NCBI GenBank assembly: GCA_965235115.1
Contig: OZ249445.1
Location: 11,160,001-11,224,000, forward strand
DNA: 64,000 nucleotides
Direction of reading: 5' to 3'
From: Laetmonice hystrix
Taxonomy: Eukaryota
Each line of letters begins with the position of its first letter. Positions within the stretch are counted from its first letter, which is position 1. Under the pieces are notes generated by a model. It ran no database searches, was not told the DNA's origin, and saw nothing but the letters and a program-made list of their open reading frames with translations. The position numbers and the translations under genes are program-made. Positions 18,164 through 29,851 of this stretch are shown piece after piece.

Positions 18164-18263
18164 ATGGCCACCAGACCGGGAAAAGTTGGGAAAAAGAAAT
18201 CTGCCACGGGCTCCTCCACTCCGGGCAAGAGGGGCAGGCCTCGCAGAAAGGTCAAAGATCAAG
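18164..18263 (+). CDS. Probable first coding exon encoding a basic N-terminus with an AT-hook, MATRPGKVGKKKSATGSSTPGKRGRPRRKVKDQ (phase 1)
   Basis: ATG in good context (gctATGG), K/R-rich open frame, KRGRPRRK AT-hook core and optimal donor AAG|gtaagt at 18263/18264. An in-frame ATG at 18053 could extend the N-terminus. Confidence 0.65.
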
Positions 18264-18448
18264 GTAAGTGGAAACCACGTGTCAGCTTCAAGATCGTGCC
18301 ACGGTGACCGCTGGCCAGTCTATGGCAAACGGAAAGGGGAATACAATCAAGTAGCTTCCACATGCAGTTAACATAGGATACTTACACTTGTAGTACAGAC
18401 ACTATTGCGTGTAGCTATCCGTTGACGTCACATATCAAATCTTTACGA

Positions 18449-25847: not shown

Positions 25848-25970
25848 GGGTGGGGGTGGGGGGCGGGGGGGTTCTAAGAGGGGGGTTGTGGGTTTGAACC
25901 TTTCAATCGGGGGGGGGGGACTTTGAAAAGGGGGATTGCAACCCCCGTAACCCCACCTTTGGATCCGCTG
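25848..25970 (+). repeat. G-rich element with a canonical G-quadruplex motif, possibly a MITE remnant
   Basis: GGGTGGGGGTGGGGGGCGGGGGGG at 25848-25871 and further G/C runs ending in gcaacccccgtaaccccacctttggatccgc. That end resembles GGATCCGC-terminated invertebrate repeats (recalled, not verified). Confidence 0.35.
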
Positions 25971-26092
25971 TAAGAGGAGTCTTATGTATACTAGCAGCAG
26001 ATGTACCCAGTATTAATTAATTCTAGTTTGGCTTTTATAAAAAGACTGAAACTTTATGCTGGAATTTGTCAATAGGAATTTGTAAATTGAGA

Positions 26093-26161
26093 CTTTTTAT
26101 TTCTTTCACAGGTGAGTACTGGTCCTTCATGATGTGAATTGGTGTCTGTAGTTTGGTAAGT
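26093..26161 (+). other. Recursive-splice-site-like AG|GT junction with a 44-nt cryptic exon (26112-26155) carrying stops in all frames
   Basis: ctttttatttctttcacag|GTGAGTA at 26111/26112 and second donor TTG|gtaagt at 26155/26156. TGA occurs at 26113, 26130 and 26135, covering all three frames. Confidence 0.5.
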
Positions 26162-26181
26162 ACGCGTCATTTGTCAGACTG

Positions 26182-26198
26182 GTGTGTGTGTGTGTGTG
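26182..26198. repeat. (GT)8 microsatellite
   Basis: gtgtgtgtgtgtgtgtg, read directly. Confidence 0.9.
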
Positions 26199-26637
26199 GA
26201 GGGTACTTTGAGCACCTATTGTTAGAACAATTCTGGTATCATAGCTGCCATCCACACCATCAAAGAACACAATATCATTCGGCATTACACTGTCTAGATA
26301 GCTGTTAACATAACCCAAGATTAAAGCTAGAAGTTAGAGGCAAATTAAAGTTTAAAACGAATAAGGTTTTCAGAAATGTCTTATCAAGAAATGTCCATAA
26401 GCACTAAAATAATATCGGTACGATAGTATTATAAAACTTGTGACGAGAAATTATTTTCCCATAATCCCTACGATTGATAAGGTAGTGAATGTTTCTGTGT
26501 TATTGAGTGTGACATCATGTACGGGCACGGGCACAAGGTTTCATTTAACCTCAAATAAACGTAGAATATTTATTTCATTTGTATTCCCTAATGCAGTCAA
26601 GCATTCTAAGGTACCCTACGTCCAGATGCCGTTTTCA

Positions 26638-26656: not shown

Positions 26657-27866
26657 TGCAATCTGGGGACTTTTGTTACACTCACAACCAATAGATGTTT
26701 GAAAGAGTAGCCGGGTGCCACCCACTGCCAGTGGTCACAAGCAGGGGGTCTTCCACTAAAACCTGAACCCTGTCCAATTATTGAGCCATCCCCCAAAGCT
26801 TACAGGAGAGGTTTAACGTGTCAGACGAGCAGCGCTATGGCGAGTTCGACTATTATAGCGTGTCCCTGTTACTTTATCAGAAACACGTTTTATAGATCGT
26901 CGTGAGGCAAGGCTTCAAGTGCTCTCAAGAGTTAGTGACTTCCACCTGAAGTGAAGCTCTTTGGCCGGTTTTGTCCTCTGCTACATATACATGTGTATGT
27001 ATTTCGTTACGCAGTATAACTGTATTTCTCATTATTATTACCGTGTTATTTGCACGTGTACTGTCAGTGCAACATTTGTTTCAGCTTAGACTAGAGACCT
27101 TTAACACTGTGGAACGTCACGTTTTCTCAATAGCCGGGTAGTGGACAGTAATGTCGTGTACCTGTGTGCTTCGATCAAGGCATTAATCCTAACTCGCTGC
27201 ACTGTTACTCTGCGTTTCTCGAAAGGATCAGTGCAGCATTAAGGAAGTCACGCTTATTAAGTCATTACTAAACATCAGTCTGTTTTACACAATCATTATA
27301 ATGCTTAATGTCGGATTTTACATGAAATTGACTTTATCTAGAAAGTGTTTAATGATTCGCCTCTTTGATTCTTTTTGTAAAAATTCCGATTTTTAAGAAA
27401 CCTCAAATGATTTTATCTTTTTATGTTTTGCCGAGGACTTCAGCAACGGCCTTTGAAAAGGCAGAGGTGTGTTGTTAACTTTGAAGTAGAGGCCAAGCCA
27501 TGATCACTTTAATACAGCACTTTAATGAAGTAAATCTATTTACTTGTGGCTTCAGTTATCAAACCAAAAACTTCCCCTTGTTAATCATTTTCATACCAAA
27601 AAAGTCCCTCATTGTATTTTGTTGTTTTATACCATTCTGTTCTAACAATTCTAATTCTACAGACGTAATGTCATCCGAAATCTCGACAAATTTTATAGTC
27701 CAAGAGTTAATATTGTATAAATTGTGAGCTGAAATAACCTACTTGCCTCCTTTTCTAGTCTTTGTCCAGAATTTCCTGCGATATACAATGAATAATTAAT
27801 CGAGCTAGTTCTTTCTCTCCCCGATAATAAATATATTTATTATTTATATTCATTTACTTGCTTGCA

Positions 27867-27930
27867 TACTGTATTTTTCCGTGTATAAGCCGTGGTAATG
27901 TATAAGCAGCAGGCCATTTTTAGAGCAAAA
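27867..27930 (+). mobile_element. Possible terminal fragment of a Tc2/pogo-like (TA-target) non-autonomous DNA transposon
   Basis: TA followed by CTGTATTTTTCCGTGTATAAGCCG with a second TGTATAAGC subterminal repeat. This resembles the CCGTATTTT...TATAAG(A/C)CGC termini of such MITEs (recalled). I found no matching opposite end. Confidence 0.4.
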
Positions 27931-29851
27931 CTTATGGGGGGGGGAGAATTAATGTTTCTGATACCAGTCATAGCAAAGTTGGGCCCCAACCGTCAACCCT
28001 ATGAAACAGGCTGAGACGTGTTTTAGCAAGATGCTTCACCAGACTGGCCATAGTGTGAAACCTCACTGTCCAGACTTGTGTTACCATCACCTCCCATTGT
28101 TAATCAGGCTGTTTCTTTCCCTGGGCATTTAAAACTACAATAGGACACACCTTTATTTTTTGGAATCCATCATATATTGACATGTAAAACAATGGGTGTT
28201 AACGGGAACACCACAGCTTTTGGTATACAGCAGGCCAGTTCCCATTGGGAACCTAGGGGCCTAGGGTATATTATATTTACTTAGTTATTTAGAAGGACAC
28301 ATTCCTTAGAGTTAAACTAATTATCGAGTGTGAACATGTGGACTGTATGAAGAAGATTCCCTTTTTGGTTATAGACGGTATTGGAAATTTACAAAGAAAG
28401 CTATTCCCTTCACTATCATTATAACGGATCATGTGTCGACTTGGACGTGATAATGACGAAATAACAGTCGGCCCTGTCGTTATATCAACGTCTTCTCCCG
28501 CACTTGTAGTGGCCAGGAAGATCAATCTTTTCTCATAATGTTCATATTACATTTCAGATTCCACTGCTAAATATCAGACTATTAATTTGTGCAGGGGTCC
28601 GCAAAAATTACTTAGAATGGCAAAAGTCTGCGGTGATCTGTTGGTTTAACAATTTGTGGCAGACAGAAGCAGATGGTGCAATTTGTTGTCAATACAGCCA
28701 CCCACAGAATTGGATCTAAATAATGCAAGCAGAGGCTCAGTCTCATGGTCAAGATGCTTCTCACGTTCCTTCATGTCATTACGTCAAAATTGGCTTCTAT
28801 TAATTTATTTATTGAATGCAGCCGAGAGAGAAATCCAAGGTCTCCATATTTTAATTATATTGGAAACTCCATCCTTGAAAGCAATTATACTCAGAGGATT
28901 TGAGGGCTGCCCAAAGCCATTTTGGCCGCACTCCTGGTAATTGCCAACTGAAGTACTGTTGTCTTGGGTGACCAGGCTAATTATAGTCCAAACATTGACA
29001 AATTATCGAAAACTGAGGCTTTTGATGAGGAGAAGCACCGAGATGATGGTTTCCCACAGCAGTCGTGTCAGCGCCTGTGTCTTGTGAGCCAGCCCGTGAT
29101 TGATGGACAAACCATATTGTGTATTCGTTGCCAGCGATTCCATAACATTTATTTGCAGACATTCTATTAGCCATAATGGCAATCAGACCCCTTCAGGTGG
29201 CAGGCTTTCATTAGAATAAAACTACTTCCTCTGCCTATCGATTCACATGATGAAAACTAGAAATTAGTCGGAATGAACTTGTTTGGATTCGCATCAGGTT
29301 CGTCAGGTGGAAGTGGAGCAGCAGGTTGGTAGTTGAGCCGTTATGATTTGTCGTTTGCCGAGTGATGTGTTGGCAGCTGATCTGGTTTTTTGGCTGGAGA
29401 GGAAAGGAGGCGAAGGGCCAGGGGTGCACATTGATCTTAGGCGCGGCATTGTGGGATGATGAAATATGATGGAATATTGCATTCATTAATTGGTAGGTGC
29501 AGTTTCAACACAATGGCCGGGGATTTGGTAGTGAACCTGTGGAGGCAGCCTGAACGGCCTCAGCGTCACTGGAGTCGCTTCATTTACCTGCAGTCACCAC
29601 TGCAATATATAGAGTCATAGGGAATGTACATTTTCGTCAAAAGCAAGGCATACACGAAGGGAATCTGGGTACTGATGTATATATAAGGCCATTTGGAGTC
29701 TACAACCACCTCATATTTGCATTAATTTGGCCTTGAACCCCAGATTTGCTGCACTGTGAAAGTCAATCTCCACCAACACTTTCGAAGTCCCTGCATCTAA
29801 TAAACTTTGGTCTTGAGAATGGGGCAATTACAGTGGAACACGATGGGAGAC

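What the first reader, a model, noticed from the sequence alone, without database searches (positions are those of the whole stretch)
26093..26198. Full recursive-splicing exon architecture: AG|GTGAGT, 44-nt all-frame-stop exon, second donor and a UG repeat
Seen: a T-rich acceptor is fused directly to a consensus donor, a second consensus donor lies 44 nt later, the exon has TGA in all three frames, and (GT)8 starts 26 nt downstream. Known: recursive splicing in Drosophila and in vertebrate long introns uses this AG|GT junction plus a short cryptic exon, often with a premature stop, and UG repeats are bound by TDP-43 and CELF proteins that repress cryptic exons. Inference: this is a ratchet point or poison exon in the long intron after the AT-hook exon, in a lineage where recursive splicing may be little described.
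Basis: partly seen in the sequence, partly recalled or inferred. Interest (0 to 1): 0.7.

Follow-up and report, generated by a model that had tools for sequence, protein, structure and literature searches.

The report
Probable recursive splice site, LMO intron
An intron-end signal fused to an intron-start signal, followed by a 44-base decoy exon, lies upstream of this worm-like animal's LMO gene and is probably the first of three stepping stones for removing a roughly 126-kb intron in pieces, as the fly version of the gene does, but no RNA data exist to prove it.

Summary
A pyrimidine tract plus CAG ends at 26111. GTGAGT starts at 26112. The 44-nt segment has TGA in all three frames. GTAAGT lies at 26156 and (GT)8 at 26182.

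The stretch is single copy. It lies on the sense strand 118 kb upstream of the first LIM exon of an LMO1/3 (Beadex) orthologue, just outside the window.

Across 214 kb, sites of this full build occur three times (26.1, 71.9 and 116.1 kb). All are on the + strand and inside the putative 126-kb intron. There are none on the other strand or in reversed controls, and simulation expects 0.04.

Genome-wide, the strict GTGAGT form has 17 unique loci against about 4 in controls.

Drosophila Bx, the fly LMO, has an experimentally validated ratchet point in its 5'UTR.

No RNA runs exist for this organism, and conservation could not be tested. The UG repeat is unique to this site, so the TDP-43 idea is unsupported.

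Verdict: probable recursive splice site (about 0.6), a new member of a known kind. This scan had already flagged the 71.9-kb site and similar sites in other long introns of this genome.

The parts
18164..18263 (+). Candidate upstream exon. An ORF (33 codons plus 1 nt, so phase 1) encodes a basic peptide with a canonical AT-hook core (KRGRPRRK). It is followed by the donor AAG|GTAAGT at 18264.
   Evidence: Phase 1 matches the phase-1 acceptor of the LMO LIM1 exon (L020:385) and recreates the conserved Gly before MQIS. No homologue was found, so this exon is unverified.
26093..26111 (+). Pyrimidine tract plus CAG: the 3' splice site half of the ratchet point.
   Evidence: 14 of 19 pyrimidines in -20..-2. 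Positions -6/-5 are T/C, not the TT seen in 99.5% of fly ratchet points.
26112..26117 (+). GTGAGT: the 5' splice site that would be regenerated after the upstream exon is joined at 26111/26112.
   Evidence: With the upstream exon ending in AAG, the regenerated donor AAG|GTGAGT matches the MAG|GTRAGT consensus at 9 of 9 positions.
26112..26155 (+). 44-nt cryptic RS-exon. Its length is not a multiple of 3 and it has a stop in every frame. Read in phase 1 from the AT-hook ORF it gives GEYWSFMM then a stop.
26156..26161 (+). Second donor, TTG|GTAAGT (7 of 9 consensus positions). It would define the RS-exon.
26182..26197 (+). (GT)8 microsatellite. It is the only (GT)>=6 on the + strand in 214 kb, and the only one in the genome placed this way after such a site.
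   Evidence: Its role is unknown and it is not a recurrent part of the build.
26216..26425 (+). A 5'-truncated copy of a dispersed repeat (at least 40 copies, 83-93% alike) inserted about 60 nt after the second donor. This is context, not part of the splice element.
   Evidence: Other copies extend further 5' and share the same 3' end. Depth in the DNA contigs jumps here.

Best explanation
The site is a recursive splice site (a ratchet point with a cryptic RS-exon) in the very long first intron of an LMO1/3 (Beadex-type) gene transcribed on the + strand.

Proposed mechanism, which is inferred and not observed:
1. The 44-nt segment 26112-26155 is recognised as an exon, using the strong acceptor at 26111 and the donor at 26156.
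2. The upstream exon is then spliced to 26112. That exon is either the AT-hook ORF ending at 18263 or a more distal first exon.
3. This join recreates a perfect donor, (A/C)AG|GTGAGT, at the junction.
4. That donor out-competes the weaker RS-exon donor TTG|GTAAGT, so the 44 nt leave with the next intron piece.
5. The same happens at 71,922 and 116,065 (window coordinates, outside the window), before the final join to the LIM1 exon at 144,386.

If the 44 nt were retained after a coding first exon, they would shift the frame and stop translation after 8 codons.

Shown here: the motif, its rarity, its strand-specific recurrence and the gene downstream. Inferred: transcription across it, the identity of the upstream exon, and use of the site.
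For: (1) Every sequence element of an RS-exon-type site is present.

(2) The stretch is single copy and is confirmed in raw-data contigs.

(3) An LMO1/3 gene lies downstream on the same strand. Its LIM1 exon at 144,385-144,606 is 81-90% identical to the best-matching LMO proteins. Further exons are at 150,398-150,559 and 150,897-151,085.

(4) The AT-hook ORF ends in phase 1 and the LIM1 exon starts in phase 1. Joining them recreates the Gly that precedes MQIS in other species' LMO.

(5) In 214 kb, composite sites occur at 26,110, 71,920 and 116,063. A composite site is YAG|GTRAGT, a pyrimidine fraction of at least 0.65, and a second GTRAG 20-100 nt on. All three are on the + strand and inside 18,264-144,384. 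There are none on the - strand, none in reversed sequences and none in the flanks. Simulations give a mean of 0.042. The result holds across thresholds.

(6) Genome-wide, the GTGAGT-class composite has 17 unique loci against 4 in the backward control and about 3-6 loci in the 1-nt offset control. The all-donor version has about 30-44 unique loci against 13. The 2-nt offset version has 2 unique loci.

(7) At all three sites the regenerated donor matches 9 of 9 consensus positions and the RS-exon donor 7-8 of 9. This is the relation that makes fly RS-exons skipped (PMC8605326).

(8) Drosophila Bx, the fly LMO, has an experimentally dissected ratchet point and RS-exon in its 5'UTR (PMC8605326).

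(9) The intron size (126 kb), the number of sites (3) and the segment sizes (7.8, 45.8, 44.1 and 28.3 kb) fall within the fly ranges (10.1101/006163).

(10) G exceeds C on the + strand from about -18 kb to 150 kb. The skew is near zero upstream of -18 kb and in the 150-158 kb bin just past the last LMO exon, and 0.05 again in the last 6 kb fetched. This fits one + strand transcription unit ending at the last LMO exon (not calibrated for this genome).
Against: No RNA run exists for the organism, so there is no junction, saw-tooth or lariat evidence, and + strand transcription across 26.1 kb is only inferred.

The upstream exon is unverified. The AT-hook peptide has no homologue in a word-indexed search or in a full HMMER search of 1.84 billion proteins, and no listed LMO protein carries an AT-hook N-terminus.

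The site lies only 6% into the intron if 18,263 is the donor, whereas fly sites tend to be evenly spaced (PMC6110457).

Position -5 is C, whereas 99.5% of fly ratchet points have TT at -5/-6.

No YTRAY branch-point motif lies in -70..-15.

Without the second-donor requirement, the strict pattern is barely enriched genome-wide: 167 against 108, with many of the 167 in tandem arrays.

Conservation could not be tested. The closest relative's contig starts at the equivalent of about 127 kb. A second lophotrochozoan shows no such site in the 46 kb upstream of its LMO exon 2.
Confidence: 0.6

Rival explanations
1. Chance motif. The acceptor-donor junction, the second donor and the (GT)8 are coincidences in non-functional intronic or intergenic DNA, picked out because many windows were scanned.
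For: Backward and offset controls show that a few such composites arise by chance in this genome: 4 against 17 for the GTGAGT class, and 13 against about 30-44 overall. So roughly one in four sites of this build may be chance. The pattern without the second donor is hardly enriched. There is no RNA or conservation evidence. Position -5 is C and there is no consensus branch point. The first-stage scan had noted 688 windows of this genome, which creates a look-elsewhere effect.
Against: Three sites of the same build lie on one strand within one 126-kb interval upstream of a same-strand gene, where 0.04 are expected. There are none on the opposite strand, in reversed sequence or in 88 kb of flanks. 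The fly orthologue of the gene is recursively spliced.
Confidence: 0.25
2. An ordinary splice element rather than a ratchet point. Either 26111|26112 is the plain 5' splice site of an unannotated non-coding exon or alternative first exon ending at 26111, or 26112-26155 is a conventional 44-nt cassette exon of the 5'UTR that is actually included in some mRNAs.
For: LMO genes in other animals have alternative first exons and start codons in the MQIS exon. A 44-nt exon would therefore be harmless in a 5'UTR, and stops in all frames would simply close upstream ORFs. AG|GTRAGT is also the consensus of a normal exon end. Expressed RS-exons exist in flies (PMC8605326).
Against: A plain donor does not need a 19-nt pyrimidine tract ending in CAG directly before it, or a second consensus donor 44 nt later. 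A cassette exon that begins with a perfect 6-nt donor is about a 1-in-2000 coincidence. The same build recurs at 71.9 and 116.1 kb.
Confidence: 0.1
3. A regulated poison exon. The RS-exon is normally silenced by a UG-repeat-binding protein (a TDP-43/TBPH or CELF homologue) bound to the (GT)8. Its inclusion switches the AT-hook isoform off by nonsense-mediated decay.
For: (GT)8 lies 26 nt after the RS-exon donor. (GT)>=6 occurs only once on the + strand in 214 kb. Inclusion after the AT-hook ORF gives a stop after 8 codons. That UG repeats are TDP-43 binding sites which repress cryptic exons in vertebrates is established knowledge and was not tested here.
Against: No other composite site in the genome has a GT repeat in this position, and the two sister sites lack one. 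The repeat sits next to the 5' junction of a truncated repeat insertion and may be incidental. The poison effect needs the unverified coding first exon.
Confidence: 0.05

Closest known systems
Drosophila Beadex (Bx, dLMO) ratchet point with its cryptic RS-exon (Joseph et al. 2018; Joseph and Lai 2021, PMC8605326)
   Same: Both are in the same gene family (LIM-only protein). Both have juxtaposed acceptor and donor (AG|GT), followed by a short cryptic exon with its own donor. In the fly, the stronger regenerated donor decides that the exon is skipped, and the same strength relation holds here.
   Different: The fly site is proven by RT-PCR and CRISPR alleles, whereas this one is a prediction. 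The paper describes one Bx ratchet point, in the 5'UTR, whereas three candidates are seen here. Here the first exon may be coding. Orthology of the sites themselves was not tested. -5/-6 is CT here rather than TT.
Drosophila zero-nucleotide ratchet points in general (Duff et al., 10.1101/006163; Pai et al. 2018, PMC6110457)
   Same: A strong pyrimidine tract plus CAG|GTRAGT lies in an intron far above 10 kb. There are several sites per intron, segment sizes are within 2.6-64 kb, and there is a downstream 5' splice site for exon definition.
   Different: The fly sites have junction reads, saw-tooth coverage, lariats and PhastCons peaks. None of these could be obtained here. The TT at -5/-6 rule is not met at this site, although it is met at the two sister sites.
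Vertebrate RS-exons in long neuronal genes (Sibley et al. 2015; Blazquez et al. 2018, PMC6224609)
   Same: The RS-exon is defined first and then re-spliced from a regenerated 5' splice site. A stop-containing RS-exon can act as a quality-control or poison exon when it is included.
   Different: The vertebrate cases have RNA support, and many of those RS-exons are annotated and included. Here inclusion is unknown.

Membership tests
Recursive splice site with cryptic RS-exon (general, fly and vertebrate) | 3' splice site directly fused to a 5' splice site around AG|GT | tested here: met
   CTTTTTATTTCTTTCACAG|GTGAGT at 26093-26117.
Recursive splice site with cryptic RS-exon (general, fly and vertebrate) | Downstream 5' splice site a few tens of nt away that defines a short RS-exon | tested here: met
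   GTAAGT at 26156, giving a 44-nt exon. The sister sites have 39-nt and 86-nt exons.
Recursive splice site with cryptic RS-exon (general, fly and vertebrate) | Regenerated donor at least as strong as the RS-exon donor, so that the exon is skipped | tested here: met
   AAG|GTGAGT matches 9 of 9 consensus positions and TTG|GTAAGT 7 of 9. This is a consensus count only, with no trained splice-site model for this species.
Recursive splice site with cryptic RS-exon (general, fly and vertebrate) | Cryptic exon out of frame or stop-containing | tested here: met
   44 nt is not a multiple of 3, and TGA occurs in all three frames.
Recursive splice site with cryptic RS-exon (general, fly and vertebrate) | Lies on the sense strand inside a long (over 10 kb) intron of a transcribed gene | tested here: inconclusive
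   An LMO gene lies downstream on the + strand. There is a phase-compatible candidate first exon at 18.2 kb and a positive GC-skew domain from -18 to 150 kb. There is no transcript evidence, and the first exon has no homologue.
Recursive splice site with cryptic RS-exon (general, fly and vertebrate) | Exon-to-site junction reads, saw-tooth intronic coverage and lariats | not testable with these tools
   No RNA run holds this stretch. The three runs found are not on record as RNA, hold about 80% of this mostly intronic stretch, and come from one sample.
Recursive splice site with cryptic RS-exon (general, fly and vertebrate) | Evolutionary conservation peak at the AG|GT core | not testable with these tools
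   The closest relative's contig ends at the equivalent of about 127 kb. No other route to its upstream sequence was available.
Drosophila-type ratchet point (narrow sense) | TT at -5 and -6 of the acceptor (99.5% of fly sites) | tested here: not met
   -6/-5 is T/C at 26110. The sister sites at 71,920 and 116,063 have TT. This is a fly property, possibly tied to fly U2AF, so the site is filed under the general kind only.
TDP-43-repressed cryptic exon | UG repeat beside the cryptic exon, recurring at such exons, with dependence on TDP-43 | tested here: inconclusive
   The UG repeat is present (26182-26197), but it is unique among composite sites in this genome. Dependence on the protein is not testable here.
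LMO1/3 (rhombotin, Beadex) gene as host | Two LIM domains with LMO-specific sequence, in exons on the + strand downstream | tested here: met
   The LIM1 exon is 81-90% identical to the best-matching LMO proteins, with E-values down to 3e-43. The LIM2 exons were found by tblastn.

The most novel reading that the evidence does not exclude
Stepwise (recursive) removal of the giant first intron of LMO/Beadex is an old protostome or bilaterian trait. On this reading the annelid-like animal and the fly keep ratchet points in the same gene because the gene needs them. In addition, this lineage makes an LMO isoform with an N-terminal AT-hook, giving a normally DNA-blind LIM-only cofactor its own DNA contact.
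Probability: 0.1. Interest if true: 0.65.

Novelty: new member of a known kind. Interest (0 to 1): 0.4.

Why it matters
Recursive splicing is documented by experiment only in flies and vertebrates. The paper library held no study linking it with annelids or molluscs. A clean three-site series in the orthologue of a fly gene with a validated ratchet point gives a simple, cheap test of whether the mechanism, and perhaps its use in the same gene, reaches across protostomes. One RT-PCR from the upstream exon into the decoy exon would do. It also warns annotators that the 44-nt and 39-nt segments here are probably decoys, not coding micro-exons. As it stands this is a prediction of a known mechanism, one of several already noted in this genome.

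Tried and rejected
RNA evidence. The single run search returned three runs that are not on record as RNA. They hold about 80% of this mostly intronic stretch and come from one sample. Laying them only confirmed the sequence. It showed about 1% heterozygosity in the flanks and no listed variant in 26036-26445, which is too short a stretch to argue for constraint.

Homologues of the AT-hook exon. A word-indexed search found no candidate. A full phmmer search of 1.84 billion proteins gave 0 hits. No AT-hook N-terminus was seen among 120 LMO hits. tblastn with other species' LMO first exons found nothing upstream.

Conservation. I walked the closest relative's ENA contig (ERZ25767047 ctg37046). 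It is collinear, with conserved non-coding blocks, but starts at the equivalent of about 127 kb, short of all three sites. I also walked 46 kb upstream of LMO exon 2 in a second lophotrochozoan contig (ERZ25073285 ctg8239). No RS-type site was seen on either strand. This is uninformative because its first exon is unknown. The walk ended at a multi-copy ORF.

Repeat origin is rejected. The candidate is single copy, and the (GT)8 is not part of the neighbouring repeat's consensus.

A known RNA or a structured element is rejected. There is no Rfam match and the folding z-score is +0.99.

Pfam scans of seven long ORFs in the 214 kb gave no hits. An Atlas search of the 267-aa ORF at -29 kb gave only chance-level scores.

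The earlier notes' claim that such sites are 'ten times more common than chance' is only partly borne out. I found about 1.5-fold without the second donor, about 2.3-4-fold for the composite against the backward control, and more against offset controls once tandem arrays are removed.

Full report
THE OBSERVATION. The + strand reads CTTTTTATTTCTTTCACAG|GTGAGT with the junction between 26111 and 26112. A GTAAGT follows at 26156, so the enclosed segment is 44 nt. It carries TGA at 26113, 26130 and 26135, one in each frame, plus TAG at 26149. (GT)8 occupies 26182-26197, starting 26 nt after the first base of the second donor. Contigs built from three public runs of one sample carry the same sequence. 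One of them matches 25939-26164 with no difference.

WHAT SURROUNDS IT. The window is G000:C11:11160001-11224000, from a 627-Mb, 35-contig animal genome. Other notes of this scan call it a probable annelid. I did not test that. The best matches of its LMO exon are lophotrochozoan. The candidate stretch is single copy. Directly after it, 26216-26425 is a 5'-truncated copy of a dispersed repeat with at least 40 copies. The other copies extend further 5' with different sequence and share the same 3' end, so the (GT)8 is flanking DNA and not part of the repeat. There is no Rfam match and no unusual RNA structure.

THE HOST GENE. I fetched 50 kb upstream and 100 kb downstream. The region is almost free of long ORFs. 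At window coordinates 144,385-144,606 (L020:385-606), on the + strand, lies an exon encoding the first LIM domain of an LMO1/3 (rhombotin, Beadex) protein. It is 81-90% identical to the best-matching LMO proteins, with E-values down to 3e-43. The remaining LIM2 exons are at 150,398-150,559 and 150,897-151,085.

The LIM1 exon has a phase-1 acceptor, cacag|GT GCC ATG. It has a good Kozak context and an AAG|GTAAGT donor. Joining the two gives ...VKDQ-G-AMQIS..., which recreates the Gly that precedes MQIS in other species' LMO. Lingula LMO3 likewise has a short basic first exon...SGRKKRK-G-PMQIS.

That is suggestive but not proof. The peptide found no homologue in a word-indexed search or in a full HMMER scan of 1.84 billion proteins. 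A second possible first-exon donor lies at -14,664. If 18,263 is the donor, the intron is 126,121 nt.

A STRAND-SPECIFIC SERIES. I defined a composite site as YAG|GTRAGT, a pyrimidine fraction of at least 0.65 in -20..-2, and a second GTRAG 20-100 nt downstream. In 214 kb this occurs at 26,110, 71,920 and 116,063. All three are on the + strand and all are inside 18,264-144,384. There are none on the - strand, none in either reversed sequence and none in the 88 kb of flanks. Third-order Markov simulations of the interval give 0.042 composite sites on average, and none of 120 simulations reached 2. The picture does not depend on the thresholds.

| Site (window coordinate) | Acceptor-donor junction | Decoy exon | Decoy-exon donor | Reading from phase 1 |
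|---|---|---|---|---|
| 26,110 | ttcacag\|GTGAGT | 44 nt | TTG\|GTAAGT | stop after 8 codons |
| 71,920 | gtttcag\|GTGAGT | 39 nt | ATG\|GTAAGT | in frame, no stop |
| 116,063 | cttccag\|GTGAGT | 86 nt | AAG\|GTGAGG | stops present |

The 71.9-kb site is the one another first-stage note flagged as a 39-nt micro-exon. At all three sites the donor regenerated after joining an exon ending in AAG is a 9-of-9 match to MAG|GTRAGT, and the decoy-exon donor matches 7-8 of 9.

The segments would be 7.8, 45.8, 44.1 and 28.3 kb. With the -14,664 donor they would be 40.8, 45.8, 44.1 and 28.3 kb.

G exceeds C on the + strand in every 8-kb bin from about -18 kb to 150 kb. The skew is near zero upstream of that and in the 150-158 kb bin just past the last LMO exon. 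It is 0.05 again in the last 6 kb fetched. This fits one long + strand transcription unit.

GENOME-WIDE BASE RATE. All counts below come from pattern searches of the whole genome.
- Without the second donor, the strict pattern Y8-N-YAG|GTRAGT is found 167 times against 108 for the pattern read backwards, and many of the 167 are in two tandem arrays. The bare junction is therefore barely enriched.
- With a second GTRAGT 20-50 nt on, there are 118 matches. About 30-44 of them are unique loci once two minisatellites are set aside. The backward control gives 13.
- A 2-nt offset between AG and GT leaves 2 unique loci.
- For the GTGAGT class, where the list is complete, there are 17 unique loci (this site is one) against 4 backwards, and about 3-6 loci with a 1-nt offset.

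So roughly three in four sites of this build are more than chance. The earlier notes' 'ten-fold' figure is too generous for some controls.

The lists also contain the ephrin-intron sites that other agents reported (C11:18.31 and 18.33 Mb, - strand). They also show a run of four + strand sites within 80 kb at C3:8.34-8.42 Mb. Clustered same-strand series are therefore a feature of this genome.

COMPARISON WITH WHAT IS KNOWN. [quoted passage not shown] There are one to six per intron, and they remove segments of 2.6-64 kb (10.1101/006163). They are recognised through a short cryptic RS-exon with its own donor. That exon is then skipped because the regenerated donor wins (PMC8605326).

One of the two genes on which this was shown in vivo is Beadex, the fly LMO. 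Its ratchet point and RS-exon lie in the 5'UTR. The present site matches the general definition on every sequence feature I could test. It fails one fly-specific feature, TT at -5/-6, which its two sister sites meet. Nearly all fly introns above 40 kb are thought to use the mechanism, with sites tending to even spacing (PMC6110457). The 6% position of this site fits that poorly unless the first exon lies further upstream.

WHAT IS NOT SUPPORTED. A search for a composite site followed within 5-35 nt by (GT)6 or more returns only this locus in the whole genome, and the sister sites have no such repeat. The TDP-43/CELF idea therefore rests on a single coincidence next to a repeat insertion junction. 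The 'poison exon' effect requires the coding first exon, which is unverified. If the first exon is non-coding, as in fly Bx, inclusion would only lengthen the 5'UTR.

WHAT COULD NOT BE DONE. No RNA run exists for the organism. The closest relative available (an ENA contig, 90% identical in the LIM1 exon) is collinear with conserved non-coding blocks at 130-142 kb, but it begins at the equivalent of about 127 kb. A second lophotrochozoan contig showed no RS-type site in the 46 kb upstream of its LMO exon 2. That says little, because its first exon is unknown.

VERDICT. The most likely reading is a recursive splice site with a 44-nt decoy exon, the first of three in the roughly 126-kb (or longer) first intron of an LMO gene. 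My odds are:

| Reading | Odds |
|---|---|
| Recursive splice site with a 44-nt decoy exon | about 0.6 |
| Chance motif | about 0.25 |
| Ordinary alternative exon or donor | about 0.1 |
| UG-repeat-regulated poison exon | about 0.05 |

It is a new member of a known kind, in a lineage where no paper in the searchable library describes the mechanism. It is one of several such predictions this scan has already made in this genome.

Noticed in passing
L020:385-606, L020:6398-6559, L020:6897-7085 (window coordinates 144,385-151,085, outside the window): A complete LMO1/3 (Beadex/rhombotin) coding region sits on the + strand in three exons. The start codon MQIS is available in the LIM1 exon itself, as in many other species.
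   Followed up: yes
window 18164-18263: If this ORF really is an LMO first exon, the isoform would put a canonical AT-hook (KRGRPRRK) in front of a LIM-only protein. No listed LMO protein has this, and the peptide has no homologue.
   Followed up: partly
L012:7920-7966 (window 71,920) and L017:2063-2155 (window 116,063): Two more acceptor|GTGAGT sites with decoy exons of 39 and 86 nt lie on the + strand. A weaker one lies at window 114,280 (ttttctag|GTATGT, second donor +36) and another at 81,879 (gctcag|GTGAGT, second donor +25).
   Followed up: yes
L023:5334 (window -14,666) and the GC-skew domain from -18 kb to 150 kb: An AACAG|GTGAGT donor follows a GC-rich stretch containing a CCAAT-type box, near where the + strand G>C skew begins. 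Using it as the first-exon donor makes the four recursive segments nearly equal (40.8, 45.8, 44.1 and 28.3 kb).
   Followed up: partly
window 26216-26425 and 27831-28421: These are two dispersed repeats. The first is a 5'-truncated, sense-oriented copy with at least 40 relatives. The second reaches depths in the thousands in the DNA contigs and was not characterised.
   Followed up: partly
window 25850-25925: A run of G-rich tracts (G5-G12) lies just upstream of the site. It has only weak matches elsewhere in the genome and causes spurious 'joints' in the contig lay-out.
   Followed up: no
G000:C12:26313499-26316225, C1:19017247-19018041, C4:33497088-33497735, C30:17910379-17910999: These minisatellites have repeat units that carry a pyrimidine tract plus AG|GTAAGT (or a near form). 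They inflate any genome-wide count of ratchet-point motifs and must be removed first.
   Followed up: partly
G000:C3:8341141, 8365605, 8391795, 8421763 (+ strand): Four strict acceptor|donor sites lie on one strand within 80 kb. This is probably another recursively spliced long intron. The host gene was not identified.
   Followed up: no
window coordinates 130,482-142,193 against ENA ERZ25767047 ctg37046 record 8224-30257: Seven collinear conserved non-coding blocks (27-105 bp, 72-96% identical) lie upstream of LMO exon 2 between this genome and a relative whose introns are otherwise unalignable. They are likely enhancers.
   Followed up: partly
L017:5118-5522 (window 119,118-119,522): A long CAG repeat is open in all three + strand frames (polyQ, polyA, polyS), 25 kb upstream of LMO exon 2. 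It is probably a microsatellite rather than an exon.
   Followed up: no
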